From Asterias rubens (taxonomy: Eukaryota), in the NCBI RefSeq assembly GCF_902459465.1, contig NC_047069.1, positions 19,530,001-19,594,000 of the forward strand: a stretch of DNA of 64,000 nucleotides, given 5' to 3'. The stretch's first letter is position 1. Each line of letters opens with the position of its first letter. A model generated the notes under the pieces. It made no database searches and was not told the DNA's origin. It saw nothing but the letters and a program-made list of their open reading frames with translations. Of this stretch, positions 25,001 through 55,000 are shown one piece after another. Position numbers and translations under genes: made by a program.

Positions 25001-28000
25001 CTCCCAGGGAGAGCAGTGTTTTTACACTGATGGGGCTACCCTGTATAAATAATACTTAATAATAAGAATAAGTATAATAATGTTGGCTTTTGTTTATTGT
25101 AAATCAGGCATGTGGCACTCCCTTAGTTAATATGCCACTGCATGTAAGATGTATCGGAAGGACCGAGACAATGTACAGTAATTATTTGTTTTGGGCTAAT
25201 CTTATCGCTGAACTAGTGTCTTTCTTATTGTATCGATAAGAGAGGAGGCAACGGTCGGCCTGAATTCCCTGAAGCTAAATTCTTCCTACCTGGGGACCAA
25301 AAGGCCAGTTCTTTCCTCGTACCACCCTTGTGCCAACGTTCATCATAATGTCATCCTTCTCTGAGTCAGTCATGCTTCGTTTTTTCTCAAACATCAGATC
25401 TAATTTGTGAAAATATTGGGGTTTATTTTGAATCACGAACGAAGAAATTCCATTTTTTAAAGGATTTTTTTTGAGCCCCTGAAAACCCCCCCCCACAAAA
25501 CCCAGAAGAGAACTTGAGTTTTGAGGTTAATTTTTATCATAATTTTGTTTATTTGCGTGAGTAACACTTGTTTTTTGCGTTAGTAATAGTTGTTTATTGC
25601 ATGAGTTATACTCGTTTATTGTGTGAGTGACAGTTGTTCCTTTCGTGAGTAACAATCGTCTTTGTGTGAGTAGCAATGTCTTATTGCGTGAGTGTCAATC
25701 GTTCCATTTAAATATACTCACAGATTTCGTCATCATTGAAGGCTGAATTGTCTTTGAAATCTTGAAAATTCAAGCAGGAACATCCAGTTGGTTGGTCAAC
25801 AGCCAGTGCATCGTGAAAGTCCTGCGTGTGGCTCTTTCGCTTTTCCAGCAGATCCGAGTCCTCGACTTGCTTTCTTTCATTTGTCACCTTTTCAAGGTGT
25901 TGCTTGATCTTTTCTTCCTTTCTACGATTGACGATAATATGTTCCTCAAGTTGTTTGCCTCTTTCGTTGCAGAATTGTTCAACTTTTTCTTTGAGTTTTT
26001 TTTCCTGTTCACGAATTTCAGCAACTTTTCTGTCTGCGTCATCGGTGATAATTTTGTGTTTCTGCTGTATCATTTGTTTGTGTTTGTTGTGTAAACTTTC
26101 AAGAAACTGACCATGATTAGCTAGGTTTTCTAGGCGGTGCCCAACATTTGTGACAAGTTCCGTAATTGCGTTCTTGCTTGATTCTATTGCCTGTGATAAA
26201 TCATGGACTATGTGGGACTGATGATCCTCAGTGCATGAAGTCTCGCAGTGGTCTCGGTCGGTGTGAACTTCACATTTTGGTGGCTTGATTGGAGCTGTTT
26301 TATGATCTTTTGTTTTCTTGCTGCGTAAGTGCGCATTGTTACAAATTTCGCAAAGATATTCTGCACACTCTTGGCAGTAGATGACAGCTTCATCTTTCTC
26401 ATCGCAGTTTCCGCAAGTTATCGTAGACATAGCGATAATTGCTTGATGCGTAAGGTTGATTAATAAAAAACTGTTTGGAAGGTCGCTGCTTCCTGCCTCA
26501 GATGAAGTCGTTGCTTTCCTGCAGATGGGAAAAATAATGTTTTTTTTTCATAGGATTGACTTTCCTCATTCCTTCAAGACATCTCTGGTAGAAGTTAATG
26601 TGGCAAGTTAAATCTTTCAATGCAGAGGTCGCACATGTAGGATATATTTTATGTATTCTGAAATTTCCATGTACCCATGTACAATTTTGTTTGTTTTCCA
26701 TCAGATTCATAACCCATAATATATATGTATTCACAGGAGGGCGTTATCACTCAAGAAAGACATTTAATGACTTGTCTAACAAAATGTCCAAATACATGTA
26801 TCTAACAATTTTAGCACAAGCAGCATTCTTTAAAAAATCTCATCAAATCCTCTATGATCAACTTAAACAATTTTGGACCAGAAGAGTACAAGTTTGTGAT
26901 GTTATACATTTGAAGAGAGCATAATCTGTGCTTTAAAGGCAGTGGACACTATTGGTAATTATCAAAATCCAGTATTCTCACTTAGTGTATCTCAACATGT
27001 ACATAAAATAACAAACTTGTGAAAATTTGGGCTTGACTGGTCTTCGGAGTTGCGAGATAACTATGAAAGAAAAAACACCCTTGTCACACGAAGTTGTTTA
27101 CTTTCAATGCTTGATTTCGAGACCTCAAGTTCTAAACTTGAGGTCTCGAAATCAAATTTGTGGAAAATTACTTCTTTCTCGAAAACTACATCACTTCAGA
27201 GGGAACCGTTTCTCACAAGGTTATGTACTATCAACCTCTCCCTATTACTAGTAACCAATTAAGGTTTTATGCTTATAATTAATTTGAGTAAATACCAATA
27301 GTGTCCACTGCCTTTAATACTGTTCAAACCCCATGTTTATACCACAGTGAAATTGTTGATAAGAATGTTCTTAAATTTGCGTTGTCTATTGATGCATTCA
27401 CTAGGAAGGAATATAAAATTAGATTTATTTTAGCATTTAAATCCTAAAACAAATATTTTTCAAAATTTCACCCGTATTAGTCAGTAATTCCGTCAAACGA
27501 CTCAATTAGCTTGATCGCATTACATACACTGATAGATTTTACCTTTCACTTGTGAAATGATCACCATGTAATAGCAGCAGTCGAGTCTAGATGAAAATGA
27601 ATTAAAACGGATCATGTACATCATCATCATACCTTTGGAAATGGGTGCGGCCGTGACGTTCAGTTTTTATCACATTCGTGGATGGTGTAAGTACATGATG
27701 TAAATGCATCAGGCCAAACAAAAGAGAAGTTGAGTTTCTCGTTACTCTACCCATCCTAGAAAACCATAACCTACAATAATTTCATGAACTTCAAATTATG
27801 AAAAAAAAACACGCAGAACTTATGGTGACACCTGAGCCCATGTTCTGTTTACGTTATGATAGTAATAGTCCAGTTTGGATCAAAAGCTACCCTACTCATT
27901 ATAATAGTATTGATAATAGTGGCTCCTTATATAGCGTGCAATCTGTCATACAGTGTGCAAGGTACGTGGAATTACGTTGAATAAAGACCCACTCCCATAT

Positions 28001-31000
28001 TTTACTTTGTGTACTTTGGCTGGCGCTTCAGTTATAGGTATTAATTACACTGTGACGTGACTAGCCCACTCCATGGTTACAATAAAGCCTCTGCAAACTC
28101 ATTATCCAGCCGCTGGGAAGGTAGAGATTTGAATTTTGCAGTATAAAGACAAGATCTAAGATTAAGTGAAAAAGAGTTCCAGATGTGTGGTGCAGCTGAA
28201 GAAAAAGACCTGTCCCCAGGATTGTCAAGACTTGGGTTCAATGAAGAAAACTATTGAAATGGATCGGAGATTCCTTGACGGAGTGTAAACTTGAAGTAGT
28301 TCTGAGATATAGTGGGGAACCTTGCTGTGGTACACTGGTACTATAAGGCAGTGCTGGGAGGGGGGGCGGTGAGGCCTTGCTTGGGGGTTAGCTTCAAAGT
28401 ATCTGTTATGAAGTACACCTCTGGCGTTCTTGCGTGTATCCCCTGTATCACGCCCTCTATAGTCCTGAGTACTCCCTCTCCCTCGTAGAGGCGGCAGGTA
28501 TGCAAGCACATGCTTCGGATTTGTTCCACTATCATAACAGCCTATAATTGTACATCGCTACGCCTACTCAGACCCCAAGACCTGATTCCAGCCTAACTCC
28601 ACCCACCATCCAGTGCGTCGTCAGCCCATCCTAATATATTGGCCAATATTAAAGAAGGAAACAAAAAATGTCATGCCGTGGACCACCCTATATTTTGGTC
28701 AGTGTAATGGGAAACACAATTTTGTTTGGGTTTGGCCAAATCCAAGGGTACTCTGATCCATCATTAGACTTGCATGACTGTAGATCATGCACCATTAAAC
28801 ACAATTCTCTTTAAAGGCAGTGGACACTATTGGTAATTACTCAAAATATTTATTAGCATAAAACCTTAATTGGTAACGAGTAATGGGGAGAGGTTGATAG
28901 TATAAACACTGAGAAACGGCTCCCTCTGAAGTAACGTAGCTTTCGAGAAAGAAGTAATTTTCCACGAATTTGATTTCAAGAGCTCAGAATTAGGTGAGGT
29001 TTCGAAATCAGCTTGCATCTGAAAGCACACAACTTCGTGTTTCAAGGTTGTTTTTTCTTTCATTATTATCTCGCAACCTCGACGACCAATTGAGCTCATA
29101 CTTTCACAGGTTTGTTGTTTTATGTATATGTTGAGATACACCAAGTGAGAAGACTGGTCTTTGACAATTACCAGTAGTGTCCACTGTCTATAAAAATGTC
29201 TGGGATCTAATTTGCATATTGATTAAGCACCTTGGTTATACCATAGAGTACTGTCCTTACTCTATGGTTATACATTGGTAGAACAATTTTTCATCAGTGA
29301 TTTTTTTTTGAACTGGTAGAAGTCGGAGTGTGTGAAAACAACCTGTATGAGTGACTTTGGTTTTAAGAGGTGAAATCTCATCTCTGCAACCCATAACCCA
29401 GTCCTGAAACTTCATGGAGGCAACAGAGGCAATTGCCTCCTCCATGCCCCCTGGTCATTGCCTTGGTGCCCTTGAAATGCTCAAGTAGAAATTTACAGTT
29501 TCTTCATAGGGTGCCCTGTAGAAAATGTCTTGGTGCCCTTGCCCTTTTGAAAACAAGGCATACAGGCCTGAATTTACCTGTTTAATTGTACACTCAGGGC
29601 TCAACTCTTACACTGGCCCACTTTCCCAAGGCTAGTGATATAATGTCAGTGTTGGGCAGGTAAGTTTAAGACTGGACATTTCAATGTAACATCTTTGTCC
29701 ACAAAAATTGAATGATGTTCAAAATGTTTAGTTTGAATCTCACAAATATCTTTTAAGCCTGCTGCGTATCACCCATAAAACAGAAGAGATAAATCTTCTC
29801 TTAGTTTGTTTTTATCAAATGAAGCGGTTATAAGATGATAATCTGTTTATTCTAGTCTCATTTCATTTTGATTCTGGTCTTTTTAATAAAATCATTTTAA
29901 TAAATGATCTACGAGTAAATACCGCTTAAGTCTGGAGCGGTTATGTCCATGCAGGAAGATTAACCAGAAATTGGACTTCACAATCTGAGAAACATTTCAT
30001 GCATGCAACATTTCTGAAATTGAAATTTGGCTGAATCTCTCTCTCTAAAACTACATTCCTTTTAATGGAATCAGTTCTCAAAATGTTATACGTTATTATC
30101 AACATCAACAGCTGCAAATTGTTATGATAATTTATTTTTTGAGTAACTAACAAAGATATCGCTTGTCACCCTAGCATTTTTCAGAAACAAAGAAATACCA
30201 CCTAAATAAAAAAGACCTCAACAAGTATTCACCAAAATATTTTAGTACTACTCTTTACATTTCATGAAAACGATTAACAATGTGTATTAAAAATTAACAA
30301 TTTGTTTTTATACTAATACCGGGTACCCCATTAAGACTTTCTTTTGAAGGCTTTCTTCCTAACACTGTAAGACTTTGTACCTTAGATTTAAACTCAAGGC
30401 TTTCGACTTATGACACTAAGACTTTCTTTTTAAGACTTTCTACCTCAGACTTAAGTCTTTCTACCTAAGACTTTCTACTTAAGACTTTAGACTTTCTACC
30501 TTAGATTTAAGATTCAAGGCTTTCGACTTAATGACATTAAGACTTTCTTTTTAAGACTTTCTACCTCAGACTTAAAGGCAGTGGACACTATTGGTAATTG
30601 TCAAAGACTAGCCTTCACAGTTGGTGTATCTCAACATAAGCATAAAATAACAAACCTGTGAAAATTTGAGCTCAATCGGTCATCGAACTTGTGACATAAT
30701 AATGAAAGAGAAAAACACCCTTGTCACACGAAGTTGGGTGCGTTTAGATGGTTGATTTCGAGACCTCAAGTTCTAAATCTGAGGTCTCTAAATCAAATTC
30801 GTGGAAAACAACTCTTTCTCTAAAACTATGGCACTTCAGAGGGAGCCGTTTCTCACAATGTTTTATACCATCAACCTCTCCCCATTACTTGTCAGCAAGT
30901 AAGGTTTTATGCCAATAATTATTTTGAGTAATTACCAATAGTGTCCACTGTCTTTAAGTCTTTCTACCTAAGACTTTTTACTTATGACTTAAGACTTTCT

Positions 31001-34000
31001 ACCTTAGATTTAAGATTCAAGGCTTTCAACTTTCCATGACATTAAGACTTTCTTTTTAAGACTTTCTACCTCAGACTTAAGTCTTTCTACCTAAGACTTT
31101 CTACTTAAGACATTAAGACTTAAGACTTTCTACTTGAGACATTAAGACTTTCTTTTCAAGACTTTATACTTTATACTTAAGACTTTCTACCTAAGACTTT
31201 CTACTTAAGACATTAAGACTTAAGACTTTCTAATTGAGACATTAAGACTTTCTTTTCAAGACTTTCTACCTCAGACTTAAGTCTTTCTACCTAAGACTTT
31301 CTACTTAAGACATTAAGACTTAAGACTTTCTACTTGAGACATTAAGACTTTCTTTTCAAGACTTTATACTTTATACTTAAGACTTTCTACTTAATTCTAC
31401 TTGAGACTTTAGACTTGGGGCTTTCTACTTAAGGCTTTATACTTAAGACATTAATACTTTCTTTTTAAGACTTTCTACCTCAGACTTAAGTCTTTCTACC
31501 TAAGACTTTCTACTTAAGACATTAAGACTTAAGACTTTCTACTTGAGACATTAAGACTTTCTTTTCAAGACTTTATACTTTATACTTAAGACTTTCTACC
31601 TAAGACTTTCTACTTAAGACATTAAGACTTAAGACTTTCTAATTGAGACATTAAGACTTTCTTTTCAAGACTTTCTACCTCAGACTTAAGTCTTTCTACC
31701 TAAGACTTTCTACTTAAGACATTAAGACTTAAGACTTTCTACTTGAGACATTAAGACTTTCTTTTCAAGACTTTATACTTTATACTTAAGACTTTCTACT
31801 TAATTCTACTTGAGACTTTAGACTTGGGGCTTTCTACTTAAGGCTTTATACTTAAGACATTAATACTTTCTTTTAAAGACTTTCTACAAAAGACTTTAAG
31901 ACTTTCTACTTTTAAGACACTAGTACTTTGGACAATCTAGAGACTTGAGTTTGTACACAATCCTTCTCGTTACTTTCAAAGCCTATCATACTTGTCCATC
32001 ACTACACTCCTACCCGAACACCACAATGATCTACTCAGTCACTTTTTGGAATATACATAACGAATTGGCACGATATCAAAGATCCTGTTCTAATGCTGCT
32101 TGTTGTTCCATATGGAACAATCTTACTCCTAATTATTTGTCATTATGTTGATACATTGAAGTCCTTGTTAGCCTTTTGTGATTGTTAATTCTTTGTTTAT
32201 GTTTGTCTATACACCATTTTACTTAGTTCCTAAAGAACAATTGCAATGAAAGTTGTTTGTAATCACTTCAGAGTTTACACACACATGTTGACCATCAGGC
32301 AGGCAATTGATCATAATGTGTGAAGTTTCAGATCAATGACCTCATCAGGGGTCTCGCGACGTGGTATTACAGGTCAACTTTTTGACGTAATGCTAATGCA
32401 AACTAAATATCATACAAAATGATTTTTGTAAAAGTGGATGGTCGGTTTTTGTTGTTGCTTGTATGCATTGTCACTCTAGGGCCATGCAAAATCAAGGTCC
32501 TCAGGAGAGTAACGGTCAAGGTGGCCAGCAGGGCCTTCATCCCATCCTACTCTGACGTCCCAGTCGTTGCTTCGCCTAATTACACCTTCACCGGGTGGGT
32601 CACCATCCTATAGAAGATTAAAATAAAGCAACAATTAGTTCTATATATTTATTGGTAATTGTAATAAGCCAAGTTCTATCCACTTTATTTCTAGAATTGC
32701 AGGCAAATTTTGTTTGCACATTTCCAGTTCTGCTGATACTTTCATTATACCAAGTAACCAACAAAAAGTAAACCCTTTTTGTGTGAATTTTAAATTGTGC
32801 TGAGGCTGCTTCTTCTGCTTGTTTTTGCTTGCTAATTTAGTAGTGATATTGAAACTTGTGTACATTTCACAGCTCTGTAAACAGAAAGTGCGGAATAAAG
32901 CAAACCTTATAAATTTCTTGGTATGTGCCTTGAGAGATGACGTAAAGAAAATAAAGTAAAACGGTGCTCATAATGACTCTTAAAGGGACGCGTTGCCTCA
33001 ATCTCGATCCTAGGGGTGATCGATCTTGCCGCGCCATTTTTTCCCAGCATGCCTTGCTCGATCATAACCCCTGGAAGTGAAACTCAACAACATCCAAATA
33101 TAAGGGATATTACAATTAGTCCTGTGGTTGATCCATTCTGTGTTGGGCGTTAGTTGCGCACACACTGGATGCGCTGTGTGTAATAAAAGTCATAAACTTG
33201 CCGTGGCGTTCAGTGTTGCATGACAACAAAAGTGATATGTACATCTTTATACGCACGCGTTTCGGCGTATAGAGCTTTTTGGAGACGCACTGTGTTTATA
33301 TGATAGCCAATCAAAGAAGTGGATCGGAGTTTCCCTCCCAGCGGTTAGAGACATATACGCAGAGCTAGCAGGTGGTACGGCCCGCTGCCCATGGTAGCGA
33401 GGTTGGCGTTGCCTTGGATCAGGCGAGTTGAAACCATTTGTTATGAAATGCGTGGTTGGAAAAATGTTTTAAAGTAGAATATAACGGTCCACACAAATAT
33501 GCCTTGCATTTAGATGCTTTCCCTTGTACGCTGTGAACTAAAACGGCATGCCATTGACTCCACAAAATGGCTGACCGTGCTAGTTTGCAAAATAAAAGGA
33601 AATCCGTGCAATTTTGAGGCATATCTGTGTGGATCATTATATTATACTTTTAAAATATCTTTCCAACTGTATACATTTCATAACAAATGGTTTCAAACGC
33701 TTTTCATAGACCAACTTGCCCTATCCAAGGCAACGTGTCCCTTTAATGACGGCAATCGACTGGAATTGACCTACGTTTTGCACTTTGCAAATGATGTTTT
33801 TAGATGATTTAATGTTCCTCAACTTAGTTTGTTCCTACCTGCGCACCCCAATGCCACTTCTTTCCTCGTACCACCCATGTGCCAACTTTCATCCCATCTG
33901 AAACCTCGGAGTCAGTCATGTTTCGTTTTTGTCCAAACATCAGATCTAATTTGAGAACAAGGGAAATGTTTGTTTTCGGTTTTTTTCTTTATTGACCGAA

Positions 34001-37000
34001 GATAATAAAAGCTTAACTTTAGAAAAAGTTAATTTTGATTATATAGCTGGCCGGTATGCTTTTTGGAATGAGAAGCCCCTTTGGTGCACAGATAAATTTT
34101 ATTGTTATAAAAAAAAATGTTCATCCATGTTCATCCATGTTTTTCTATTGAACGTTTCATCAAATGAAAGCTCAACAATCGCTCTAATTAGAGCGATTGT
34201 TGAGCCAAACAACCGAATGAGGGTGGTGTACATTGGTGTTGTAGTTTTGAACGTGTTTTGGAGGTCTCTAGGAACCACCTTGTGCACCAAAGAGCTAATT
34301 TGTTGAATATCAATTAAAAGTGTGCGTCCTTTCTAAAGGATTTTTCATTATTGGACAGATTATAAATGCTTAACTTAAAGGCACTGGACACTATTGGTAG
34401 TTGTCAAAGACTAGTATATTCTCAGTTGGTGTATCTCAATATACATGTTGTGCACAAAATAACAAACCTGTGAAAATTTGAGCTCAATTGGTCGTTGAAG
34501 TTGCGAGATAATAGTGGAAGAAAAAACACCCTTTTCACACGAAGTTGTGTGCTTTCAGATGCTTGATTTCAGGACCTCAAAGTCTGATTCTGAGGTCTCA
34601 AAATCACATTCGTGGAAAATTACTTTTTTCTCAAAAACTACGTTACTTCAGAGGGAGCTGTTTCTCACAATGTCTTATACTACCAACAGCTCCGCATTGC
34701 TCGTTACCAACAAGTAAGTTTTTATGCTAACAATTGGTTTGAGTGGTTACCAATAGTGTCCACTGCCTTTAAGACAAAGTTTACATATCATGTAGGTTTG
34801 TTAACGAGTACGCAAAATTAGCTCAAAAATGTGCACATAGTTGATCAATTTACTCACAGATTTCCTCATCAGTGAAGTCTGAACTTTCTTTGAAATCTTT
34901 AAAATTCAGGCAGACACATCCAGTTGGGTTGTCAACATCCAGTGCATCTTTTAAGTCTTGCATAAGACTCTTTTGCATTTTCAGAAGATCAATTTCCTGG
35001 ACTCCTTTCTTGTCATTGGTCACCTTTTCCAGCTGTTGCTTTATCTTTTTTTCATTTATACAGTTGCTTGCCATAATTTTTTTGAATTCTTTGCCCTTTT
35101 CATAGCAGAATCTTGTCACTTTGTCTTTAAGTTTTTGTTCCTCTTTACGGAGTTCAGCAACTTTTCTGTCTGCGTCATCAGTGATAATTTTGTGTTTTTG
35201 CTTTATCCTTTCTTGGTGTTCAGTGGATAACATGTCAAGAAGTTCTCTTTTTTTAGTAAACCTTTGTAGGCACTTCTCAACTTGTTCGACACGATCATTA
35301 ATGATGTCATTGCTTGATTCTATGGCTTGTGATAAACCAACGAGTTCGTGGTAAGGGTTTCGATGATCCTGGGTGCATGAAGCACATATCATTATGAAGC
35401 AACGTTGGCAGTAGAAAATCTTGTTCTGGTTGGGGTGTGTACCACATTTTGGTACATTCGTGAGAAGCTGAGAGTTCTTTTTGAAACTTGCTTTGCCAGA
35501 GCGTAGATGGTCGATTGAAGCTTTTTCATGGCTTTTTGTTCTTTTGCTACGTTGGTGCGCATTGTCACAAACCTCGCAAAGAAATTCCTGACAATCAAGG
35601 CAGTAGCTGACAGCTTCATCTTCCTCATCGCAATCTTGACAAATTATCTTAGTCTGAAGACGTCTGACGAGCTGCTGTTGTTCGGCAATAGTTTCCATCA
35701 AGTTAATTAAGAAAAGACTCTGGGTGAGGTCATAAATTCCTGCCTCTGGTGAAGACGTTTCTTTTCTGCAGATGGGACATATAATGTTTTCTTCCAGAGG
35801 ATGGGCTGTCCTCATTTCTTCAAGACAGTTTTGGCAGAAGTTGTGTTTACAAGTCAGAGTCTTGGGGTTGATGTACTGCGAGTAGCAAATCGGGCATTCC
35901 AGCTGCGCTTTGCTGATATTATCTAATACAGTTTGACCATTAAGACCATGATGCTCAACAAGCCGCTGTTGTTCAGCAATAGTTTCCATCAAACTAATTA
36001 ATGAAAAGCTCTTTGGGAGGTCATCAATTCCTTCCTCTGGTAAAGAGGTTTCTCTCCTGCAGACGGGACATGAAATGCTTTTTGTTGGATGGGCTTCCAT
36101 CATTTCTTCTAGACAGTTTTTGCAGAAACTGTGTTCGCAAGTCAGGGTCTTGGGGTTGATGTACTGGGAGTAGCAAATCAGGCATTGCAACTGCGTTTTT
36201 CTGATATTATCCAACACGGGTACACTGCTTACCTCATCCATTTTTATTCCAGTGTCTCACAAGTATTGCAGTAAGAATTGATAGCTGAAATGCTAACTTC
36301 TACTGCAGTTATCAATGCTGCTCAAATGATAAAATGTACAAAATACGGTTGATAGTATAAAACACTACAAGAAATAGTGTCCACTGTCTTTAAGGGCCAT
36401 ACTTGCTGTGATAAATCAGATCAGACACTTCTCCACGTCTCAGACCAGAATAATCATACCGGGGTTGAATTGGTACTGGCTGGCTCCAGAAGATGCTCAA
36501 ACAGTGTTTGAATATAAAAGAATAGATGAGTATCAACTCTGAAACAACCACTTTTTTTTACAAAATTTCTCCGTGCACATCACCTAGAATACAATTGGTA
36601 CTGATAGTGTTTGCCTACCACAAGTGAAGTATTCACTATACTGTAGAAGTAGAGTCTAGCTGAATAAGAGTGAACTATGAACAAATAATGCACACTAGCT
36701 GTGAAAATGGGTGTAACTGTGCTATTCATTTTTGTTTATGTAAACCAAGGGTATATGTCATTGTCAGACTTGCATTATTGAATTGGAAAACATGTGTCCT
36801 TGTCACAAAAAGTAATTTTGGTAATTTGGCGAATAGCTAGTGTGACTAATGTCAAAGTTGCAACTCAGTCAGCGCGCAGCCCACTGAAAAGTGCTTCCGT
36901 TTGTTTTTTACGTATGCACGTTCCGTTGGGCTGTGCATATTTAATGAGCTTGGCGACCCCTTTTTAAAAACCTTGTAACTGTCAAAGTTTTCAGTAGAAT

Positions 37001-46000: not shown

Positions 46001-49000
46001 TCATCGCACCAGTCAAGTTCTGGCACCAACGCACAGTAAGGGAGGCAATCAAGATCAAGGCTCACAACACAGTTCCACAAGACATCGGATTCTTCATCAA
46101 CGACATCTGGTCACCACTTCTCAAGCAGCAGCTCACCACAACACTGACACACTCCAACGCACACACATCCAGCCATCAACCAACGCACACGCTTCACCGG
46201 ACAAGAACAGCTTTGATCCTTCCCGCCCAAAGGTGCATCCCTCCAGCCATACATAAGCTCCACCACCGCCAGTAGTCCAGCATTCTCCTTAAAAACGTTG
46301 AAACCAAATCGGCTCTTTTCAGAGCCACCACTCCTTCAAAAGAGATTTTTACTCATAGTTGTGCCCCCAAGGTTACTGTTCATATTTATATTTATAGTTA
46401 CTCTTACACTGCTGAGCTATGCAAGATCAAGAACATCAGGGTTATAACGGTCTGTGTTATCTTCATCCCAACGTACGTAAAATGCCCATTCATTTTGGGC
46501 TTCAATGATTGTACCTTCGCCAGGTGGGCTACCATCCTAGAAGATAAAAGAAAGCATCATTTAGTTTGGTATTGATTGATTGGAGACTGGGTTTGGATTG
46601 GATTGAAGACTGAGTCCCAGGTTTGACACTTGTGTCCTTACGCTAGACACTCAACCAAGATGCTTTGCCCTTCGAACTGGGATGTACATTTTTGTAAAGC
46701 TATTGGTCCCGTGTGTTGTGTAATGTACTAAAAGAACCCAGTGCACTTATCAAAAAGAGAAGGGGTTGGACCTAGTGCTCTTGATTTGATTGGTTGCATA
46801 TGTCCCGCAGAACCTTGTAAACCATAACACGCAACTTAACTGTTTCCTACCTGAGACCACCTCCAGTGCCACTTCTTTCCTCGTACCACCCTTGTGCCAA
46901 CTTTCATCATATCTAAAATCTCGGAGTCAGTCATGTTCCTCTTTTTCCCAAACATCAGATCTAATTTTAAAACAGGGAGGTTTAATTTTATTTATTGACC
47001 AAGGATTATAACAGCCTTGCTTTAGAAAAAGTTGAAGGGTCTGGGTCCTTTTTGTAGGACACGAAACACAATGTCGAATTACATTAAACTTACATGGTTT
47101 GAAGATAATGATGGTAGAAAGCTTTCCTTAAAATATTTTTTACTGAGGTGCTTTTTTTTTTTTTAAGAAATGAGTAAAACAAGTCACAAAAATAATTTTT
47201 GTCTCAGCTAGGCAAAATGTTTTTAAGCATGTACAACATATTTTGGTGACATTGTTTAAAATTAATGTAAATCTGTGGACATTGTGTTTTGTGTTACAAA
47301 AAGTACCCAAATCCTTTTATCGTTGATTATTAAGAGAGTACACACACATGGATGTAAATGTGGACATGGGTCATGTGTGAAAAGTTTTTATATGGATGTG
47401 GTTTTCATTCCAAAACTTAAAGATGACTGATCAATATACTCACAGATTTCTTCATCAGTGAAGTCAGAACTTTTTTTGAAATCTTGAAAATTCAAGCAGA
47501 CACATCCAGACACATAGGTAATAGGTTTTTTTATGTCTTGCACAACACTCTTTTGGAATTCCAGAAGATCAAAGTCATGGACTTGCTTTCTGTCATTTTT
47601 CACCTTTTCCAGCTGTATCTTTAACTCTTCTTCTTTTATACTATTGCAGGCCTTAACTAATTGAAATTGATTGCCCTTTTGGTAACAGAATCGTGTCACT
47701 TTGTCTTTAAGTTTTTGTTCCTCTCTACGGAGTTCAGCAACTTTTCTGTCTGCATCATCAGTGATAATTTTGTGTTTTTGCTTTATACTTTCTTGGTGTT
47801 CAGTGGATAACATGTCAAGAAGTTGTCTTTTATTAGAAAACTTTTGTAGGCACTCCTCTCCTTTTCTGATGTGTTCATTAATGATATTGTTGATTGATTC
47901 GGTGGCTTGTGATAAACCAAAGACTTTATGGACCGGTATTCGATGATCCTGGGTGCATGAAGCACATACCATTAGGGAACAAGTCTTGCAATAGAAATCT
48001 TGTTCTGGTTGGTGTGTTTTCCACATTTTGGTACGTTCGTGAGAAGCTGAGAGTTCTTTTTAAAACTTGCTTTGCCAGAGCGTAGATGGTCGATTGAAGC
48101 TTTTTCATGACCTTTTGTTCTTTTGCTACGTTGGTGCGCATTGTCACAAACCTCGCAAAGAAATTCCTGACAATCAAGGCAGTAGCTGACAGCTTCATCT
48201 TCCTCGTCGCAATCTTGACAATTTATCTTAGTCTGAAGACATCTGACAAGCTGCTGTTGTTCGGCAATAGTTTCTATCAAGTTAATTAAGAAAAAACTCT
48301 GGGGGAGGTCATCAATTCCTACCTCTGGTGAAGACGTTTCTTTTCTGCAGATGGGACATATAATGTTTTCTTCCAGAGGATGGGCTGTCCTCATTTCTTC
48401 AAGACAGTTTTGGCAGAAGTTGTGTTTACAAGTCAGAGTCTTGGGGTTGATGTACTGCGAGTAGCAAATCGGGCATTCCAGCTGCGCTTTGCTGATATTA
48501 TCTAATACAGTTTGACCATTAAGACCATGATGCTCAACAAGCCGCTGTTGTTCAGCAATAGTTTCCATCAAACTAATTAATGAAAAGCTCTTTGGGAGGT
48601 CAGCAATTCCTGCCTCTGGTAAAGAGGTTTCTCTCCTGCAGACGGGACATGAAATGCTTTTTGTTGGATGGGCTTCCATCATTTCTTCTAGACAGTTTTT
48701 GCAGAAACTGTGTTCGCAAGTCAGGGTCTTGGGGTTGATGTACTGGGAGTAGCAAATCAGGCATTGCAACTGCGCTTTTCTGATGTTATCCAACACGGGT
48801 ACACCGCTTACCTCTTCCATTTTTCTTGCAGTTGCTTCCAAGTATCTTGCACTGAAATTGATTTATAAAAACCTCAAAATAAACCATTATAACATAAATT
48901 AACTATGTGGATTTCGAGGTATTGCATGGTGAGGTATCAATGTGTATTTAGTTTGCGGTGACACAGTGGCCCAACTTCATAGAGCTGCTTATATAATGGC

Positions 49001-52000
49001 TGATTTTATGCTTACTGCGCGATTTCCATTTCATAGCGCTGCTTACAGTAAACACACAAAAAGGCATACTAACCTTCCGGTGCTTATTGCATGAAGATTA
49101 ATAACGTAACAGACGTAACAAACAGTGTTTGTGTGATGGATGAACGAATATATTAAGTCGAGAAGAACATTAAGTCGTGATAACTTATATTATTTATGTA
49201 AGCCAAGGCTTATGTCATTGCCAGACATGCATTGTTCCATTGGAAAACCTGTGCCCTGACAGAGAGTTATATTAGTAATGTGTATAACTGGTGATCTGCA
49301 ATCAAGTGTTTGATTACTCAGGGGTTTTCCTGATTTGGGGGATCTTCTCAAAAACCTCCCTGAGCCTTTAAAGTTTCTTGAAAGAATGGAAAGCAATCAC
49401 CAAAGGGAGAAAGAAATAGTCCACATTTTTTCCAAACCTGTTGTTCCCGATTTCTGGTGATGCACTGAGTCAGACCCGTATCCAGGAATTAATATTGTTT
49501 TGTATAATTATTATGTTTACTTTTATTTATTTATTTATGATTGCTATTTTTTCTTAGGGGGGGGCGGGCGGGTATATGAACGAAAAACGAATGTTGTCGC
49601 ATTAGCGTCGCTCGTTTAAGAATGAACTGTCTTTAAAAGTAGAAGAGTGCGTTCTTGGCTGATAAAAACAGAACTAGTAGATAGTCTAAGTTGTCTCTGT
49701 TAAAGGCACTGGACACCTAGGTAATTGTCAAGGACCAGTATTCTCACTTGATGTATCCAAAAATGTGCAGAAAATAACACTGGACAGTTTGGTAATTGTA
49801 AATAAAATAACACTGAACACCTTTGGTATTTGTCAAAGACCAGTATTCTCACTTGGTGTATTCCAACATATGCATACACGAACATATCTGTGAAAATTTG
49901 GACTCAAATTGGTCATCGAAGTTGCAGGAGAATAATGAAAGATAAAAACACCCTTTGTTGCGCTTTCAGATGCCTAATAAAAGGCTTCAGTCATGAAGTA
50001 TTTTATGGTTTGAGTGAGAAATTACCTCTTTCTTAAAAACCCTGTTACTTCAGAGGGAGCTGTTTCTCACAATGTTCTAACAATAGTTCTATACTATTAA
50101 CATCTCTCCATTGCTCAGCACCAAGTGCGTTTTTATGCTAACAATTATTTTGAGTAATTATCACTCGTGTCCAGTGCCTTTAAAATCTTATTTCATGCAT
50201 GTCTAGTGTGAAATACCTTGCTCAAGAGCACAAGTTTCAAGACTGGATATTAAACTTTAAGTTTACAGAATTATTGTCAACTCACCCAACCGGTAGTTTG
50301 TTCCAGTACCCCTTTTGTGCGGCCTACTGGGTCACCCACAACTCCTGCCGTGGCACAATCCCAAAGATGGTTTAAAAATATACAGATAAAAATGATAAAG
50401 ACACGAACAATGATGTTGATAATAAGACGCTTGGATGGAGTTGTTGGAGTGGTAGAGCGGAAAATTCCCTGTTTAGGGGAGTCCAAAAAAATATCTCAGA
50501 GTGTGATAGCTTTTTCAACTCTCAATGAAGTAGTCGTAGAACACAACTCAACACTCCACTTAGGCTAATGTGTCATGAGTATGCAGGGCTTGGTAGTACA
50601 AATACATCCTTATCTTCTGCCCAACTTGACTTTTGGAACATAACTATAGACTGGGAAGGGGTCACAAAGGTTAGAGATTCTATGGCATGCCTGATGGTGC
50701 AAACAGAGTTAACTATAAAGCCAGTATGGCATGCCTGATGGTACATGAGTACATACATTTCTCTAAACCCAGACTCAAATGGAGACAATACCAGGGCCCA
50801 TGTTCATGGCTCTGCTTCTGTAAGCAAAGAATCAGAGCTCATGGAAGGCAAGCAAGAAATGTTGTGCTTTTATAAGAGATTTTTTGCTTGTGCATATGTG
50901 CATACCCCATGTATTCTTAGCTTACACAGCTACCCCAGAATTGCGACGCTTGCCCTGTAAACGAAGAATGGTGATTTTATAAAGCTTATAAGCACAAAAA
51001 TTCACTAAGCAACAGAATAGTAAATTGCTTAGCAGAAACAGGCCACCTTTCCAAGTTACATTTTAATGTTTGCATTGTTGAGGCTGGTGGTCGACAAAAG
51101 TTTTGTTAAGCAAAGAAATTTGTAAAGCCGAATATTCTGTTTAACAGCTTCATGAAACTGGGCCATGAGCCATGAAATTTGGCCCGGAGTTTTGATCAGA
51201 TAAACTTGAATGTTCAATGAGAGCTTGAATTAAATTCTTTTTAAATCACCTTCTTGTTTCTTCTGCTACAGGTGAGTCGTGACGACCATCGTTACTTGAA
51301 GCAAGTGGAGATGCGCGAGGAAGGTGGAACGCCCTCTATTGTCGGGGCAGTGCGAGCTGGTTTGGTCTTCCAACTCAAGGAGGCCATAGGGGCAGATAAC
51401 ATCATGGCCAGGGAACATGAATTATGCAGGTTGAAAATATTATACAAATACTGTTGCATGATCAATATGACACTTTCGTTGGTAAACAATTTCTGCTAAG
51501 CAAGATTATTTGATGCATACTAAATTTTGTGCTTCATGGCTCTTTGCGTTTGGGCCTAGTTATAAAGGAGGAACATGCCCCATGAGTTTTTGTTGAAGGT
51601 TTTTTGTGTGAGTAGCATACCATCAGAGTTTGAACCATTTTGTATTTATTGTTTTTAATTTTCAGGAAAGCCCTGTCAAAATGGACAGATTGCACCAATC
51701 TCGTCCTGCTAGGCAACACAGTGGTTCCCCGTCTGCCCATTTTCTCATTTCTTATCCGCCACCCGACAACCGGTCAATTTTTGCACCACAACTTTGTCTG
51801 TGCTGTTCTGAATGATGTGTTTGGTCTACAGGCGCGAGGAGGATGTGCATGCGCTGGCCCCTATGCCCAGGTATACCTTGTTCTACATGGACTAGTTTTT
51901 TGTACTCAAGTGATATTAGAAGGGAAAACTGATGGGGTAAATTTTAACTAATGTGGGGTTGAACAAAAAACAAAACGTACAAGAGAATTGGAACTGCAAC

Positions 52001-55000
52001 TTCCAGACTAAAGGGTCTAGGTACTATTTGTAGGAAATAAAACACAATGTCCACAGGTTTACATTAAACTCACTCAGTTTGAAGATAATGATAGTAGAAA
52101 GCTTCCCTTAAAATATTACTTGCTGAGGTGCTGTAGTTTTTGAGAAATGAGTAAGCAAAGTCACAAAAATAATTGTTATCTCATGAGACAAACAATAATT
52201 TCAGCATGTAAAACATATTACCGTATTACTAATTTCTCATAAACTATAGCACCTCAGCAACTAATAATTTAAGGTAAGTTTTCTACTATCATAATCTTCA
52301 AATGGTGTAAGTTTAATGTAAATCTGTCTACATTATTTTTTGTGTTTTTTTGTGTTACAAAAAGTACCTAATCCTTTAAAGGCAGTGGACACTATTAGTA
52401 ATTGTGAAAGACTAGCCTTTACAGTTGGTGTATCTCAACATATGCATACAATAACAAACCTGTGAAAATTGGAGCTCAATCGGTTGTCAAAGCTGTGAGA
52501 TAACAATGAAAGAAAAAACACCCTTGTCACACGAAGTTGTGTGCGTTTAGATGGTTGATGAAATGAGGTCTCAAAATCAAATTCGTGGGAAATTACTTCT
52601 TTCTCGAAAACTATGTCACTTCAGAGTGAGCCGTTTCTCACAATGTTTTATACTATCAACCTCTCCCATCTACTCGTCACCAAGAAAGGTTTTATGCTAC
52701 TAAATATTTTGAGTAATTACCAATAGTGTCCACTGCCTTAAATGTGCTTGAGCTCTACCAAGTAAGCTATCTAGCCCTATGTTGGTACTCTCCCAATTTT
52801 TTTCGGGGGGGGGGGGGGGGTATCTCTAATAAGGACACCACCTACAATAGGGCTAGATGGCTCAAACGATAGAGCGCCAGGACATAATTCTTGAGGACTC
52901 GGGTTCAATTTCTGCTTCTGTCAATTTCCCTTAGTTCAACTCCAAATGACTAACTTGTTTGTTAACTTTTTATAGTCAAGATTGTTTTATATCTTCCCGA
53001 CAAAAAGCCTACAAAATGATAAATAGTTTGTGTATGCACTTTCTTTTCAAGGTCACAACTTTTTGTTGTCATCAAGTTCAATTTCCTAGTGTGTGCAGGC
53101 AATTCAATTTAAAGGTTTAAACATCTCAGTTAAACTTAAAGACACTGGACACTATTGGTAATTGTCAAAGACCAGACTTCTCACTTGGTGTATCTCAACA
53201 TATGCACAAAATAACAAACCTGTGAAAATTTGAACTCAGGTGGTTGTCAAAGTTGCGGGATAATAATGAAAGAAAACCGCCTTTTTCAAAGTTGTGTGCT
53301 CTCAGATGCTTGATTTTGCGACAACAAAATCTAAATCTGAGGTCTCGAAACCAAATTTGTGGAAAGTTACCTCTTTCTAGAAAACTAGGCACTTCAGAGG
53401 GAGCCTATCCTCACTATGTTTATACTATCAACCTCTCCTCACTACTCATTACCAAGTGAGGTCTTATGCTAATGATTATTTTGAGTTCCAGGCAATTGTG
53501 TCCACTGCCTTTTACAACATCTTCTGAAGATACTTTGGCACATTTCTTTTGTAGGATTTGCTTGGCATTAATGAGAAGCTCGCCAAAGAAATTGAGGCAG
53601 CGTTACTTGAAGATGGGTAAGATTTAAGACAAATTAAAGATGTATTTTTATTTTATTAACGACATTTGAAAGCAAGTTAACATTACTGGTTTTTGGAACA
53701 TCAGTATTAACAATTATTTATTAACCAACATACAAATAAAAAACAAAGCTAAGAAAATTGAATCTCACTCGGTCATCGCAGTTGCAATAAATTAGTTTAA
53801 AAACCTAAGTGTTTTCAAGCACTAAGTTTTTCCTTAGGTCCACAATGATCCCCTTCTGTGTTTTTGGCTATGTTTTGTTGCCTGCTTTTTAAAAAAATCA
53901 GTTTTACATTGATGTTCACAACTTCTAGTTAACATTCATGTAATATGCATTGAATTAGACTTAAACACAATCGATTTGATTTGTTTAAGGTAAGATTTAT
54001 TTCAGATAAGTCTAATTTCCCTGGATTGTACCTTATCTTTCGGCATAATTTTTTAAGTTTGCATCGTACGCAAATACCTCCTCTAGGCTGTTTGTCGAAT
54101 TTCACCAATATTGCAATTATCTTCTTTGGAGCTGATTATGCAGAAAATATTGCAAAACAACCTTCTTTCTGCAGTCAGAGATTGTACATGTGTAACATGG
54201 GCCCAATTTCATAAAGCTGTTTAGTAGAAAATACTGCTTAGCAAATTTTTTTGCTTAGCAAATAATGAGTGGGACACCATTGCAACAATGTAAACTTTTT
54301 GGAATTTTGGCTTGCAACCAGTCTCTGTTAAGCAAGATTTGTTGTGTGCTCAGCAAGTGTTTATGCTTACAGACTGTATGGAATTGGGCCATGGTTCATT
54401 TGGCTGGTATACTTACTCTGGTAAGCACAATTTTGTTGTGCTTAGCTATTTTTATTATGCTTAAGCAACTGATTCATTTCACTTGATTATGACATATTTC
54501 TTTCTCCAGTCGACTTGACAGAGTGCATCTGCGACGCTATACGGAATACTCGGAGAAAGAGATTCTCAGGTAGAGTGTTCAGTTATTTTTGACTTTTTTA
54601 AGTAAATGTAAAAAGAAAAAAAATTAAAATATATATTTAGCTGTTGCAAGAATTGCTCACCAAAAGGACCTTTGGTATAAATGCAAAAAATGGTTATCTG
54701 CCTGACGTTTCAAACCATGCATAGTCTTTCTCGAAAGCTTAAAAGTAAAATGTATTCGCCATTTGCGTGTGGAGCCTTGAATTTGGAACAACAGTAAATA
54801 GAAAACAATGTAATGACACTTACATCCAAACAGATACATTAATGCAGTATGAATGAACCATTAAGTTGTAACTCCACACACACACACACACATGGCGGAT
54901 TTTTGCAAAGGGCAAACAGTGAGACTACCAATATTAGAGCTACAATCCAAATATCTCGTTGGGCCCCCCTGCCCCCCCCTTTCAATGTCATTATTGCACG

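What the first reader, a model, noticed from the sequence alone, without database searches (positions are those of the whole stretch)
32476..33945. Non-canonical TRIM C-terminus: a MIB/HERC2-like domain split over two small exons in three paralogs
Seen: TRIM2, 3 and 4 each splice to two exons missed by the ORF track, giving VGT(R/W)VVRGK.W...Q|DG.PPGEG.I..V.WD..Y. Established: this matches the Mib_herc2 signature GxRVVRGPDWxWGxQDGG..GTV..WD, a substrate-binding module of Mind bomb and HERC2. It is not among the usual TRIM C-terminal classes (PRY-SPRY, COS/FN3, PHD-BROMO, filamin/NHL, MATH, ARF, TM). The residues between the core motifs differ strongly among paralogs (KNWPFGP / KKWHWGA / KKWHWRWS). 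Inference: a diversifying recognition domain playing the role SPRY plays in vertebrate restriction TRIMs.
Basis: partly seen in the sequence, partly recalled or inferred. Interest (0 to 1): 0.76.

Follow-up and report, generated by a model that had tools for sequence, protein, structure and literature searches.

The report
Starfish TRIM ligases with MIB/HERC2 tail
Three neighbouring starfish genes for TRIM-type protein-tagging enzymes really do end in a small Mind-bomb/HERC2-type binding domain split over two short exons, a tail absent from the textbook TRIM classes but shared with other starfish and with acorn worms, and not shown to be an immune-style diversifying sensor.

Summary
Observation confirmed. 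The window is Asterias rubens. On the minus strand, TRIM2, TRIM3 and TRIM4 each join a large RBCC exon (donor GTGAGT, phase 1) to two small exons with canonical AG/GT sites. RNA contigs from three runs join 34858|33945 and 33839|32607 in TRIM3. The RefSeq model of TRIM2 and the A. amurensis models of all three syntenic orthologs use the same junctions.

The tail is a real but shortened MIB/HERC2 domain:
- TRIM2 scores 36.0 bits on Pfam PF06701 (cutoff 33.5) and matches MIB1 at E 3.7e-10.
- An HMM built without Asterias sequences gives 43-58 bits for the three spliced tails; the best of 1000 shuffles gives 10.5.
- AlphaFold models match the HECTD1 MIB/HERC2 domain (TM 0.86 and 0.76).

The architecture is not unique to this locus. 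RING + B-box + MIB_HERC2 genes with the same intron at Q|DG occur in Patiria and in the hemichordate Glandiceps. The same domain combination occurs in Acanthaster, Ptychodera and many unnamed eukaryotic assemblies. I found no paper describing it.

The "diversifying SPRY-like sensor" reading is not shown. Omega in the MIB domain is about 1 for TRIM3 and TRIM4 (not significant) and 0.10 for TRIM2. TRIM4 carries a 1-nt frameshift, and TRIM2 has lost its RING.

The scan had not noted MIB/HERC2 tails elsewhere in this genome.

The parts
34858..36241 (-). TRIM3 exon 1: two tandem RINGs, B-box1, B-box2, coiled coil. Ends at donor T|GTGAGT, phase 1.
   Evidence: ORF. Pfam finds RING x2 and B-box x2. 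Donor located. RNA contigs end this exon at 34858.
33839..33945 (-). TRIM3 exon 2: conserved linker (YLMFGQKRNMTDSEVSDGMK) plus the first third of the MIB/HERC2 domain (VGTWVVRGKKWHWGAQ).
   Evidence: Translation and AG/GT sites. Joined to both neighbouring exons in RNA contigs X1, X2 and X8.
32476..32607 (-). TRIM3 exon 3: the rest of the MIB/HERC2 domain (DGDPPGEGVIRR...VRVGWDE...RYSPEDLDFAWP) and the stop codon. The 3'UTR continues below 32400.
   Evidence: The spliced tail scores 42.9 bits on an HMM built without Asterias sequences.
25722..26430 (-). TRIM2 exon 1: B-box1, a partly deleted B-box2 and the coiled coil. No RING.
   Evidence: Identical to residues 1-236 of P0005.
25290..25399 (-). 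TRIM2 exon 2: linker plus the start of the MIB/HERC2 domain (VGTRVVRGKNWPFGPQ).
   Evidence: Pfam MIB_HERC2 profile positions 1-15. Part of P0005.
24615..24734 (-). TRIM2 exon 3: the rest of the MIB/HERC2 domain and the stop codon.
   Evidence: Pfam MIB_HERC2 profile positions 16-52. Whole protein scores 36.0 bits against a 33.5 cutoff. AF2 pLDDT 92 and TM 0.86 to 3dkm.
47444..48820 (-). TRIM4 exon 1: two RINGs, B-box1, B-box2, coiled coil. Interrupted by a 1-nt deletion in a T-run near 47996.
   Evidence: Two overlapping ORFs. Alignment to TRIM3. The A. amurensis ortholog P0002 is intact.
46851..46960 (-). TRIM4 exon 2: linker plus the start of the MIB/HERC2 domain (VGTRVVRGKKWHWRWSQ).
46417..46536 (-). 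TRIM4 exon 3: the rest of the MIB/HERC2 domain and the stop codon.
   Evidence: The spliced tail scores 50.2 bits on the HMM built without Asterias sequences.
16571..17686 (-). TRIM1 large exon: the fourth cluster member. It is the closest to Patiria's TRIM-MIB gene (46% identity), but its tail carries no MIB/HERC2 domain.
   Evidence: P0029 and P0175 have no PF06701 hit.

Best explanation
These are members of a tandem cluster of Asterias rubens TRIM-type (RING, B-box, coiled-coil) E3 ubiquitin-ligase genes. They belong to an old ambulacrarian subfamily whose C-terminal substrate-binding module is a single compact MIB/HERC2 domain.

Shown here:
- The domain is encoded by the last two exons, with a phase-0 intron at ...Q|DG....
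- The exons are spliced in RNA.
- The sequence and the predicted fold are those of the MIB/HERC2 SH3-like barrel.
- Relative to the Valvatida (Patiria, Acanthaster) tails, the Asterias tails are about 7 residues shorter before the last strand.
- The same gene structure exists in another starfish order and in a hemichordate.

Inferred:
- The coiled coil dimerises the protein and the RING(s) recruit a charged E2.
- The MIB/HERC2 barrel docks a short linear peptide motif of the substrate, as the MIB/HERC2-ZZ-MIB/HERC2 unit of Mind bomb 1 does with the N-box of Notch ligands.

Within the cluster the copies have taken different paths:
- TRIM2 lost its RING and part of B-box2 but is under strong purifying selection. 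It is probably a RING-less adaptor or a partner of the other copies.
- TRIM3 and TRIM4 have a duplicated RING that gene conversion keeps alike, and they change fast in the coiled coil and the MIB tail.
- TRIM1 has replaced the MIB tail altogether.
For: Exons, splice sites and phases.

RNA contigs spanning both junctions of TRIM3 in three runs.

TRIM2 equals database protein P0005.

Sequence homology to MIB/HERC2:
- Pfam MIB_HERC2 gives 36.0 bits (cutoff 33.5) for TRIM2, and 19.0 and 23.1 bits for the A. amurensis orthologs of TRIM3 and TRIM4.
- TRIM2's tail matches MIB1 (4xi6, E 3.7e-10) and HECTD1 (2dk3, E 6.6e-7).
- An HMM built only from non-Asterias MIB/HERC2 domains scores the spliced tails at 42.9 (TRIM3), 50.2 (TRIM4) and 58.1 (TRIM2) bits. 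The maximum over 1000 shuffles of each tail is 10.5.

Predicted fold:
- TRIM2 tail: pLDDT 92, best PDB matches HECTD1 3dkm (TM 0.86, rmsd 1.7) and 2dk3, then MIB1 4xi6.
- TRIM3-ortholog tail: pLDDT 80, TM 0.76 to 2dk3.

RING and B-box hits.

Same architecture elsewhere:
- Patiria P0004 (MIB_HERC2 63.9 bits) and Acanthaster P0013.
- Glandiceps P0103, P0140 and P0099.
- Ptychodera P0117 and P0132.

Identical intron positions and phases in Patiria and Glandiceps.

Syntenic three-gene cluster in A. amurensis.

Selection: TRIM2 omega is 0.13 overall and 0.10 in the MIB domain.

MZM of Mib1 binds the N-box peptide of JAG1/Delta: PMC11887331.
Against: No binding or ligase activity has been tested. 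The substrate-recognition role is carried over from MIB1.

The TRIM3 and TRIM4 tails fall below Pfam's gathering score in the orthologs that could be scanned, and their separate exon halves give no Pfam hit at all.

Omega of about 1 in these two tails is also what a decaying domain would show.

TRIM4 is frameshifted in this assembly.

The A. rubens TRIM3 protein itself did not appear among database proteins, so its coding status rests on the open frame, on the RNA contigs and on the A. amurensis ortholog.

The coiled coil was not tested with a dedicated predictor.
Confidence: 0.8

Rival explanations
1. The MIB tail of TRIM3 and TRIM4 is under positive, diversifying selection as a pathogen- or parasite-recognition surface. 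This would make the cluster an innate-immune analogue of the vertebrate PRY-SPRY restriction TRIMs.
For: - Orthologs from two congeneric starfish are only about 85-89% identical.
- MIB-domain dN between TRIM4 orthologs is 0.23 against 0.067 for the rest of the protein (Fisher p = 2e-6 on nonsynonymous sites).
- Omega at sites that vary in non-Asterias MIB domains is about 1.5 in both pairs, while the fold-defining W, Q, G and W residues stay fixed.
- The constant N-terminal module is homogenised by gene conversion, with RING dS of 0.017 between the paralogs.
- Other notes of this scan describe fast-changing TRIM-NHL clusters in the same genome (these are leads only).
Against: - No contrast reaches omega significantly above 1. 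The within-MIB tests give p = 1.0 and 0.64, and the pooled MIB-versus-rest N/S comparison gives p = 0.22.
- dS is also raised in the TRIM4 tail (0.28 against 0.145).
- TRIM4 is frameshifted in A. rubens.
- TRIM2's tail is nearly invariant between the species, with omega 0.10.
- Only six sequences were available, so no site model could be run.
- There are no expression or infection data.
Confidence: 0.2
2. The TRIM3 and TRIM4 tails are relaxed or decaying relics. Only TRIM2 keeps a working MIB/HERC2 domain, and the two double-RING copies are drifting towards pseudogenes or towards functions that do not need the tail.
For: - Omega is about 0.8-1.25 in their MIB domains.
- Pfam scores are below threshold at 19-23 bits.
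- TRIM4 has a frameshift near 47996.
- TRIM1 shows that the tail can be lost in this cluster.
Against: - All three exons are open, with canonical splice sites, in both species for TRIM3, and in A. amurensis for TRIM4.
- The invariant residues of the family are all retained.
- The linker exon is strongly conserved, with omega 0.1-0.2.
- TRIM3 transcripts are spliced.
- The scores on the HMM built without Asterias sequences are high.
- The predicted fold is retained.
Confidence: 0.2
3. The match to MIB/HERC2 is a chance motif resemblance, or the two small exons are not really part of the TRIM transcripts.
For: The separate exon halves of TRIM3 and TRIM4 give no Pfam hit.
Against: Every direct test went the other way.
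Confidence: 0.01

Closest known systems
Mind bomb 1/2 (MIB1, MIB2), MZM module
   Same: A RING-type E3 ligase that uses MIB/HERC2 barrels to recognise its substrate. TRIM2's tail aligns to the first MIB/HERC2 domain of MIB1 (4xi6, E 3.7e-10). MZM binds the short N-box motif of Notch ligands (PMC11887331).
   Different: MIB proteins have two MIB/HERC2 domains flanking a ZZ finger, then REP domains, ankyrin repeats and C-terminal RINGs. They have no B-box or coiled coil. Here a single shortened domain sits at the extreme C-terminus, behind an N-terminal RBCC module.
HECTD1 MIB/HERC2 (CPH) domain, PDB 3dkm and 2dk3
   Same: These are the best structural matches (TM 0.86 and 0.84 for TRIM2's tail, 0.74-0.76 for the TRIM3 ortholog) and they also match by sequence (E 6.6e-7). 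As here, there is a single domain inside an E3 ligase.
   Different: HECTD1 is a HECT ligase and its domain is internal. Relative to the Valvatida TRIM-MIB tails, the Asterias tails lack about 7 residues of the YRxGxxGxYDL segment.
'TRIM56-like' and 'TRIM33-like' gene models of Patiria miniata, Acanthaster planci, Glandiceps talaboti and Ptychodera flava
   Same: True relatives with RING, B-box(es), coiled coil and a C-terminal MIB_HERC2 domain. Patiria and Glandiceps share the three-exon structure, with the phase-1 intron before the linker and the phase-0 intron at Q|DG. Patiria's gene also lies next to an Aminotran_5 gene, as the A. amurensis cluster does.
   Different: They carry full-length MIB/HERC2 domains (60-72 bits in the best cases) and a single RING. 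The Asterias copies have a shortened domain, a duplicated RING (TRIM3, TRIM4) or no RING (TRIM2). The database names are automatic. Real TRIM56 and TRIM33 have other C-termini.
Vertebrate PRY-SPRY TRIMs such as TRIM5alpha
   Same: An RBCC scaffold with a small beta-rich C-terminal recognition domain. The genes are tandemly duplicated, and the tails change faster than the RING/B-box part.
   Different: The fold is unrelated. Positive selection, which defines the restriction-factor TRIMs, was not demonstrated here.

Membership tests
MIB/HERC2 domain (Pfam PF06701) | Score at or above Pfam's gathering threshold (33.5 bits) | tested here: met
   TRIM2 (P0005) scores 36.0 bits, E 6.5e-9. It is not met by the A. 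amurensis orthologs of TRIM3 (19.0 bits) and TRIM4 (23.1 bits). The spliced A. rubens TRIM3 and TRIM4 proteins could not be handed to Pfam by reference.
MIB/HERC2 domain (Pfam PF06701) | Homology of all three window tails to independent family members | tested here: met
   An HMM built from 18 non-Asterias domains gives 42.9 (TRIM3), 50.2 (TRIM4) and 58.1 (TRIM2) bits. The best of 1000 shuffles of each tail is 10.5 bits.
MIB/HERC2 domain (Pfam PF06701) | Signature residues: VG.RV.RG.DW.W..QDG ... G.V ... V.V.WD ... YR.G..G.YDL | tested here: met
   The invariant W, Q, G and W and the nearly invariant G, V, R, D, V and Y are all present in the three tails. The YRxGxxGxYDL segment is reduced to Y.P..L(D/E)L, which is about 7 residues shorter than in Patiria and Acanthaster.
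MIB/HERC2 domain (Pfam PF06701) | SH3-like five-stranded barrel fold | tested here: met
   These are predicted models only. The TRIM2 tail has pLDDT 92 and TM 0.86 to HECTD1 3dkm. The TRIM3-ortholog tail has pLDDT 80 and TM 0.76 to 2dk3.
MIB/HERC2 domain (Pfam PF06701) | Binds a peptide motif of a ligase substrate | not testable with these tools
   This is known for MIB1's MZM module (PMC11887331). There are no data for these proteins.
TRIM / RBCC E3 ligases | N-terminal RING finger | tested here: met
   TRIM3 and TRIM4 each have two RINGs. TRIM2 has only out-of-frame RING remnants at 26452-26617, so TRIM2 fails this feature.
TRIM / RBCC E3 ligases | One or two B-boxes after the RING | tested here: met
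   zf-B_box and ANCHR-like_BBOX hits occur in all copies. B-box2 of TRIM2 is partly deleted.
TRIM / RBCC E3 ligases | Coiled coil after the B-boxes | not tested
   No coiled-coil predictor was run. The roughly 160-residue K/E-rich stretch lies where the coiled coil is expected, and it aligns with that of other TRIMs.
Positively selected recognition TRIMs (TRIM5-like) | Omega above 1 concentrated in the recognition domain | tested here: inconclusive
   MIB-domain omega is 1.25 (TRIM3), 0.81 (TRIM4) and 0.10 (TRIM2). Sites outside the conserved core give about 1.5 in TRIM3 and TRIM4. None of these is significant.

The most novel reading that the evidence does not exclude
RBCC-MIB/HERC2 is an undescribed and ancient class of TRIM ligases, dating from before the echinoderm-hemichordate split. 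A parallel RING-B-box-Filamin-MIB branch has expanded in other eukaryotes. In asteriid starfish its MIB barrel has become a fast-diversifying recognition surface of an innate-immune or genetic-conflict system, and the conserved RING-less TRIM2 acts as a regulator of the double-RING copies.
Probability: 0.15. Interest if true: 0.65.

Novelty: new variant of a known kind. Interest (0 to 1): 0.42.

Why it matters
TRIM ligases are classified by their C-terminal recognition domain, and the standard scheme comes from vertebrates. This locus shows that deuterostome invertebrates keep a further class. In it, the recognition module is the same small barrel that Mind bomb, HERC2 and HECTD1 use.

That makes two things possible:
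- It gives a compact, single-domain system for asking what MIB/HERC2 barrels recognise. The tail is only 55-60 residues and sits at a free C-terminus.
- It gives a natural series for studying how TRIM clusters evolve: a conserved RING-less copy, two fast double-RING copies kept alike by gene conversion, and a copy that lost the tail.

The gene models and the Pfam hit are already in public databases. The gain is therefore in description and evolution, not a new mechanism.

Tried and rejected
- **Pfam on single exons.** Only TRIM2's halves gave weak hits, so this was not decisive. It was replaced by whole-protein scans and by an HMM built without Asterias sequences.
- **Literature.** No paper links MIB/HERC2 with TRIM or B-box proteins. 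McMillan 2015 is not held, so the variable positions could not be mapped onto the peptide-binding site of MIB1.
- **ESM Atlas look-ups.** They returned only generic TRIM clusters and said nothing about the tail.
- **Organisms of the unnamed assemblies.** Look-ups for P0124, P0182 and P0105 returned only accession codes. The other unnamed relatives (P0122, and P0193 onward) were not looked up.
- **A MIB relic in TRIM1.** Its last exon ends KRVGRRVIGGGGPLQGY, which resembles the start of the domain, but the HMM scan found nothing there or downstream. I left it as a remark.
- **Rfam on the TRIM3 region.** No match.
- **The spliced TRIM3 and TRIM4 proteins of the window.** They have no reference, so they were never handed to Pfam, to the PDB search or to structure prediction. 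Their A. amurensis orthologs and local scripts stood in for them.
Full report
**What is there**

The window is 37.7% G+C with no N runs. It comes from the starfish Asterias rubens: TRIM1 of the window equals XP_033631578.1, 'E3 ubiquitin-protein ligase TRIM56-like isoform X2 [Asterias rubens]'.

Four TRIM-like genes lie on the minus strand:
- TRIM1 has its large exon at 16571-17686.
- TRIM2 has its large exon at 25722-26430.
- TRIM3 has its large exon at 34858-36241.
- TRIM4 has its large exon at 47444-48820.

TRIM3 and TRIM4 each carry two tandem RINGs, two B-boxes and a long K/E-rich stretch where the coiled coil is expected. TRIM2 starts at B-box1.

**The observation**

All six small exons exist at the stated coordinates. 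Each exon 2 follows an AG and ends ...CAG|GTAGG. Each exon 3 follows an AG, begins GATGG and runs to a stop codon. The three large exons end with the same donor, GAAATCT|GTGAGT. That leaves one base, which joins the first two bases (AT) of exon 2 to make a tyrosine codon. The junction therefore reads ...EEI-Y-LMFG....

A six-frame scan with a MIB-domain HMM finds these three exon pairs and nothing else in the 64 kb.

**Splicing**

I laid contigs from four public runs on 32400-36300.
- In run X1 a single 1561-nt contig covers 35341-34858, then 33945-33838, then 32606-32400, and runs on into the 3'UTR.
- X2 has a contig that joins 34858 to 33945.
- X8 has a contig that joins 33838 to 32606.
- The one-base offset at the second junction is the G shared by the intron start and the start of exon 3.

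For TRIM2, the spliced translation is identical to a database protein from A. rubens (P0005, 312 aa).

In Asterias amurensis the three orthologs lie in the same order and orientation. Their annotated proteins are reproduced exactly by the same three-exon structure.

The refutation test 'the exons are not spliced' therefore fails.

**Is the tail a MIB/HERC2 domain?**

- The two exon halves of TRIM2 hit contiguous parts of Pfam PF06701, positions 1-15 and 16-52.
- The whole TRIM2 protein scores 36.0 bits against a gathering score of 33.5.
- The A. amurensis orthologs of TRIM3 and TRIM4 score only 19.0 and 23.1 bits.
- TRIM2's tail finds MIB1 (4xi6, E 3.7e-10) and the HECTD1 MIB/HERC2 domain (2dk3, E 6.6e-7) among solved structures.
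- To test the diverged copies without circularity, I built an HMM from 18 non-Asterias domains. These came from TRIM-MIB proteins of other taxa, MIB2, an SRCR-MIB protein and a Kipferlia repeat protein.
- That HMM scores the spliced window tails at 42.9 (TRIM3), 50.2 (TRIM4) and 58.1 (TRIM2) bits. The best of 1000 shuffles of each tail reaches 10.5.
- AlphaFold2 models give a helix for the linker followed by five strands. The TRIM2 tail has pLDDT 92, and the TRIM3-ortholog tail has pLDDT 80.
- Foldseek ranks the HECTD1 MIB/HERC2 domain first for both models (TM 0.86 and 0.76). MIB1's MZM follows at rank 4 for the TRIM2 tail and rank 3 for the TRIM3-ortholog tail.
- Relative to the Patiria and Acanthaster tails, the Asterias tails lack about 7 residues of the YRxGxxGxYDL segment but keep the last strand, L(D/E)(L/F)A. 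This explains why the Pfam alignments stop early.

**How widespread it is**

- The nearest non-Asterias relatives are Patiria miniata P0004 (RING, two B-boxes, MIB_HERC2 at 63.9 bits) and Acanthaster planci P0013.
- I ran a profile search of 1.8 billion representatives, then a local HMM screen and Pfam scans.
- This added hemichordate proteins from Glandiceps talaboti (P0103, P0140, P0099) and Ptychodera flava (P0117, P0132).
- It also added a crinoid protein with a weak match to my local MIB-domain HMM (20.1 bits; it had no Pfam MIB_HERC2 hit at E 0.001), an entry from a Filamoeba transcriptome, and unnamed assemblies.
- A further search found more than twenty clusters of intronless RING-B-box-(Filamin)-MIB_HERC2 proteins in unnamed ENA assemblies.
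- In Patiria and Glandiceps the gene has the same structure as in Asterias: a large RBCC exon ending in phase 1, a small exon ending ...Q|, and a last exon starting DG.
- Patiria's gene lies next to an Aminotran_5 gene. The A. amurensis cluster lies inside a gene model that carries the same domain.

The split MIB tail is therefore an inherited feature of a family older than the echinoderm-hemichordate split. It is not an invention of these paralogs.

I found no paper that pairs MIB/HERC2 with TRIM or B-box proteins. Marin's 2012 survey of TRIM evolution does not mention the domain.

**Is it diversifying?**

I built codon alignments of the three A. rubens genes and their A. amurensis orthologs and computed Nei-Gojobori estimates by segment. 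The TRIM4 frameshift codon was masked.

| Gene pair | Omega, whole gene | Omega, MIB domain | MIB N / S differences |
|---|---|---|---|
| TRIM2 | 0.13 | 0.10 | 1 / 3 |
| TRIM3 | 0.49 | 1.25 | 10.5 / 2.5 |
| TRIM4 | 0.51 | 0.81 | 25.8 / 8.2 |

- Pooled over TRIM3 and TRIM4, pN/pS is 0.95 in the MIB domain and 0.47 elsewhere. The N/S contrast is not significant (Fisher p = 0.22).
- Neither tail differs from omega = 1.
- Sites outside the core, with the core defined from non-Asterias sequences, give about 1.5 in both pairs. These counts are too small to test.
- The fold-defining residues are intact in all six sequences.
- The linker before the domain is strongly conserved, with omega 0.1-0.2.

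The data fit either a mix of constraint and positive selection or plain relaxation. They do not show the SPRY-like arms-race pattern, and for TRIM2 they contradict it.

**Other features of the cluster**

- The RING region of TRIM3 and TRIM4 is nearly identical within A. rubens (dS 0.017), but it differs from both orthologs (dS 0.13-0.17). From B-box2 onward the genes group by orthology. This is the signature of recent gene conversion over the 5' part.
- TRIM4 has a 1-nt deletion in a T-run near 47996, which breaks B-box2 in this assembly. Its ortholog is intact. I could not check this against reads.
- TRIM2 keeps only out-of-frame RING remnants and a partly deleted B-box2.
- TRIM1 is the closest copy to Patiria's gene (46% identity), yet it ends in a different, repeat-rich tail with no MIB domain.

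**Mechanism**

Shown: the gene structure, the splicing, the domain identity, the predicted fold, the conservation pattern and the phylogenetic spread.

Inferred from established knowledge of TRIM ligases and of Mind bomb: the coiled coil dimerises, the RINGs recruit the E2, and the C-terminal barrel binds a short peptide motif of the substrate. The model for the last step is the MZM unit of Mib1, which binds the N-box of Notch ligands (PMC11887331).

TRIM2 has no RING but is under strong constraint. It is most simply read as an adaptor or regulator that still uses the barrel.

**Verdict**

The domain assignment is correct. The 'non-canonical TRIM class' statement holds against the published classifications, but the class is old, widespread and already present in automatic annotation. 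The diversifying-sensor idea remains an untested possibility.

Noticed in passing
window 35650-36241 and 48230-48820: Concerted evolution. The double-RING region of TRIM3 and TRIM4 has dS 0.017 within A. rubens, against 0.13-0.17 to either A. amurensis ortholog. From B-box2 onward the genes group by orthology.
   Followed up: partly
window ~47996: TRIM4 has a 1-nt deletion in a T-run (AAGATTTTC in TRIM3, AAGATTTC here). It splits the large exon into two frames inside B-box2. The A. amurensis ortholog is intact. It is not known whether this is real, polymorphic or an assembly error.
   Followed up: partly
window 26452-26617 and 25722-26430: TRIM2 keeps only out-of-frame remnants of a RING and has a partly deleted B-box2. 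Even so, the RING-less gene is conserved between the two Asterias species at omega 0.13.
   Followed up: partly
window 34375-34773; also 12744-13129, 22424-22813, 26933-27320, 28811-29193, 30570-30958, 49811-50183, 52376-52742, 53133-53512, 9547-9903: A MITE-like element of about 400 bp with inverted ends of about 26 nt has at least ten copies in this window. One copy lies in intron 1 of TRIM3. Summed contig depth over it reaches about 1.15 million in RNA runs. It has no Rfam match.
   Followed up: partly
window ~11715-11810: The last exon of TRIM1 ends KRVGRRVIGGGGPLQGY*, which resembles the first strand of the MIB/HERC2 domain (MKVGTRVVRG). It may be a relic of a lost tail, but the HMM scan gives no support.
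   Followed up: partly
window 33884-33945, 25335-25399, 46899-46960: The linker before the domain (YLMF..KR.MTDSE...) is more conserved than the domain itself, with omega 0.1-0.2 between orthologs and paralogs. It is predicted to be a helix. Its function is unknown.
   Followed up: no
L001, L002 (A. amurensis) and L006 (Patiria miniata): The TRIM-MIB genes are tied to an opposite-strand gene carrying an Aminotran_5 domain. The gene model is 1226 aa and also has ATP_bind_3 in A. amurensis, and it is a neighbouring gene in Patiria. This microsynteny is conserved across two starfish orders.
   Followed up: no
L003, L004, L005 and proteins P0151, P0193-P0218: Unnamed ENA assemblies hold more than twenty clusters of intronless RING-B-box-(Filamin)-MIB_HERC2 proteins, some of them next to each other on one contig. 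The host organism is unknown.
   Followed up: partly
proteins P0012, P0059, P0067, P0129: MIB/HERC2 domains also occur in quite different contexts. They are found between SRCR domains in a fish 'SSC5D-like' protein, and as 8-10 tandem repeats in Kipferlia and in a clam 'mucin-5AC-like' protein.
   Followed up: no
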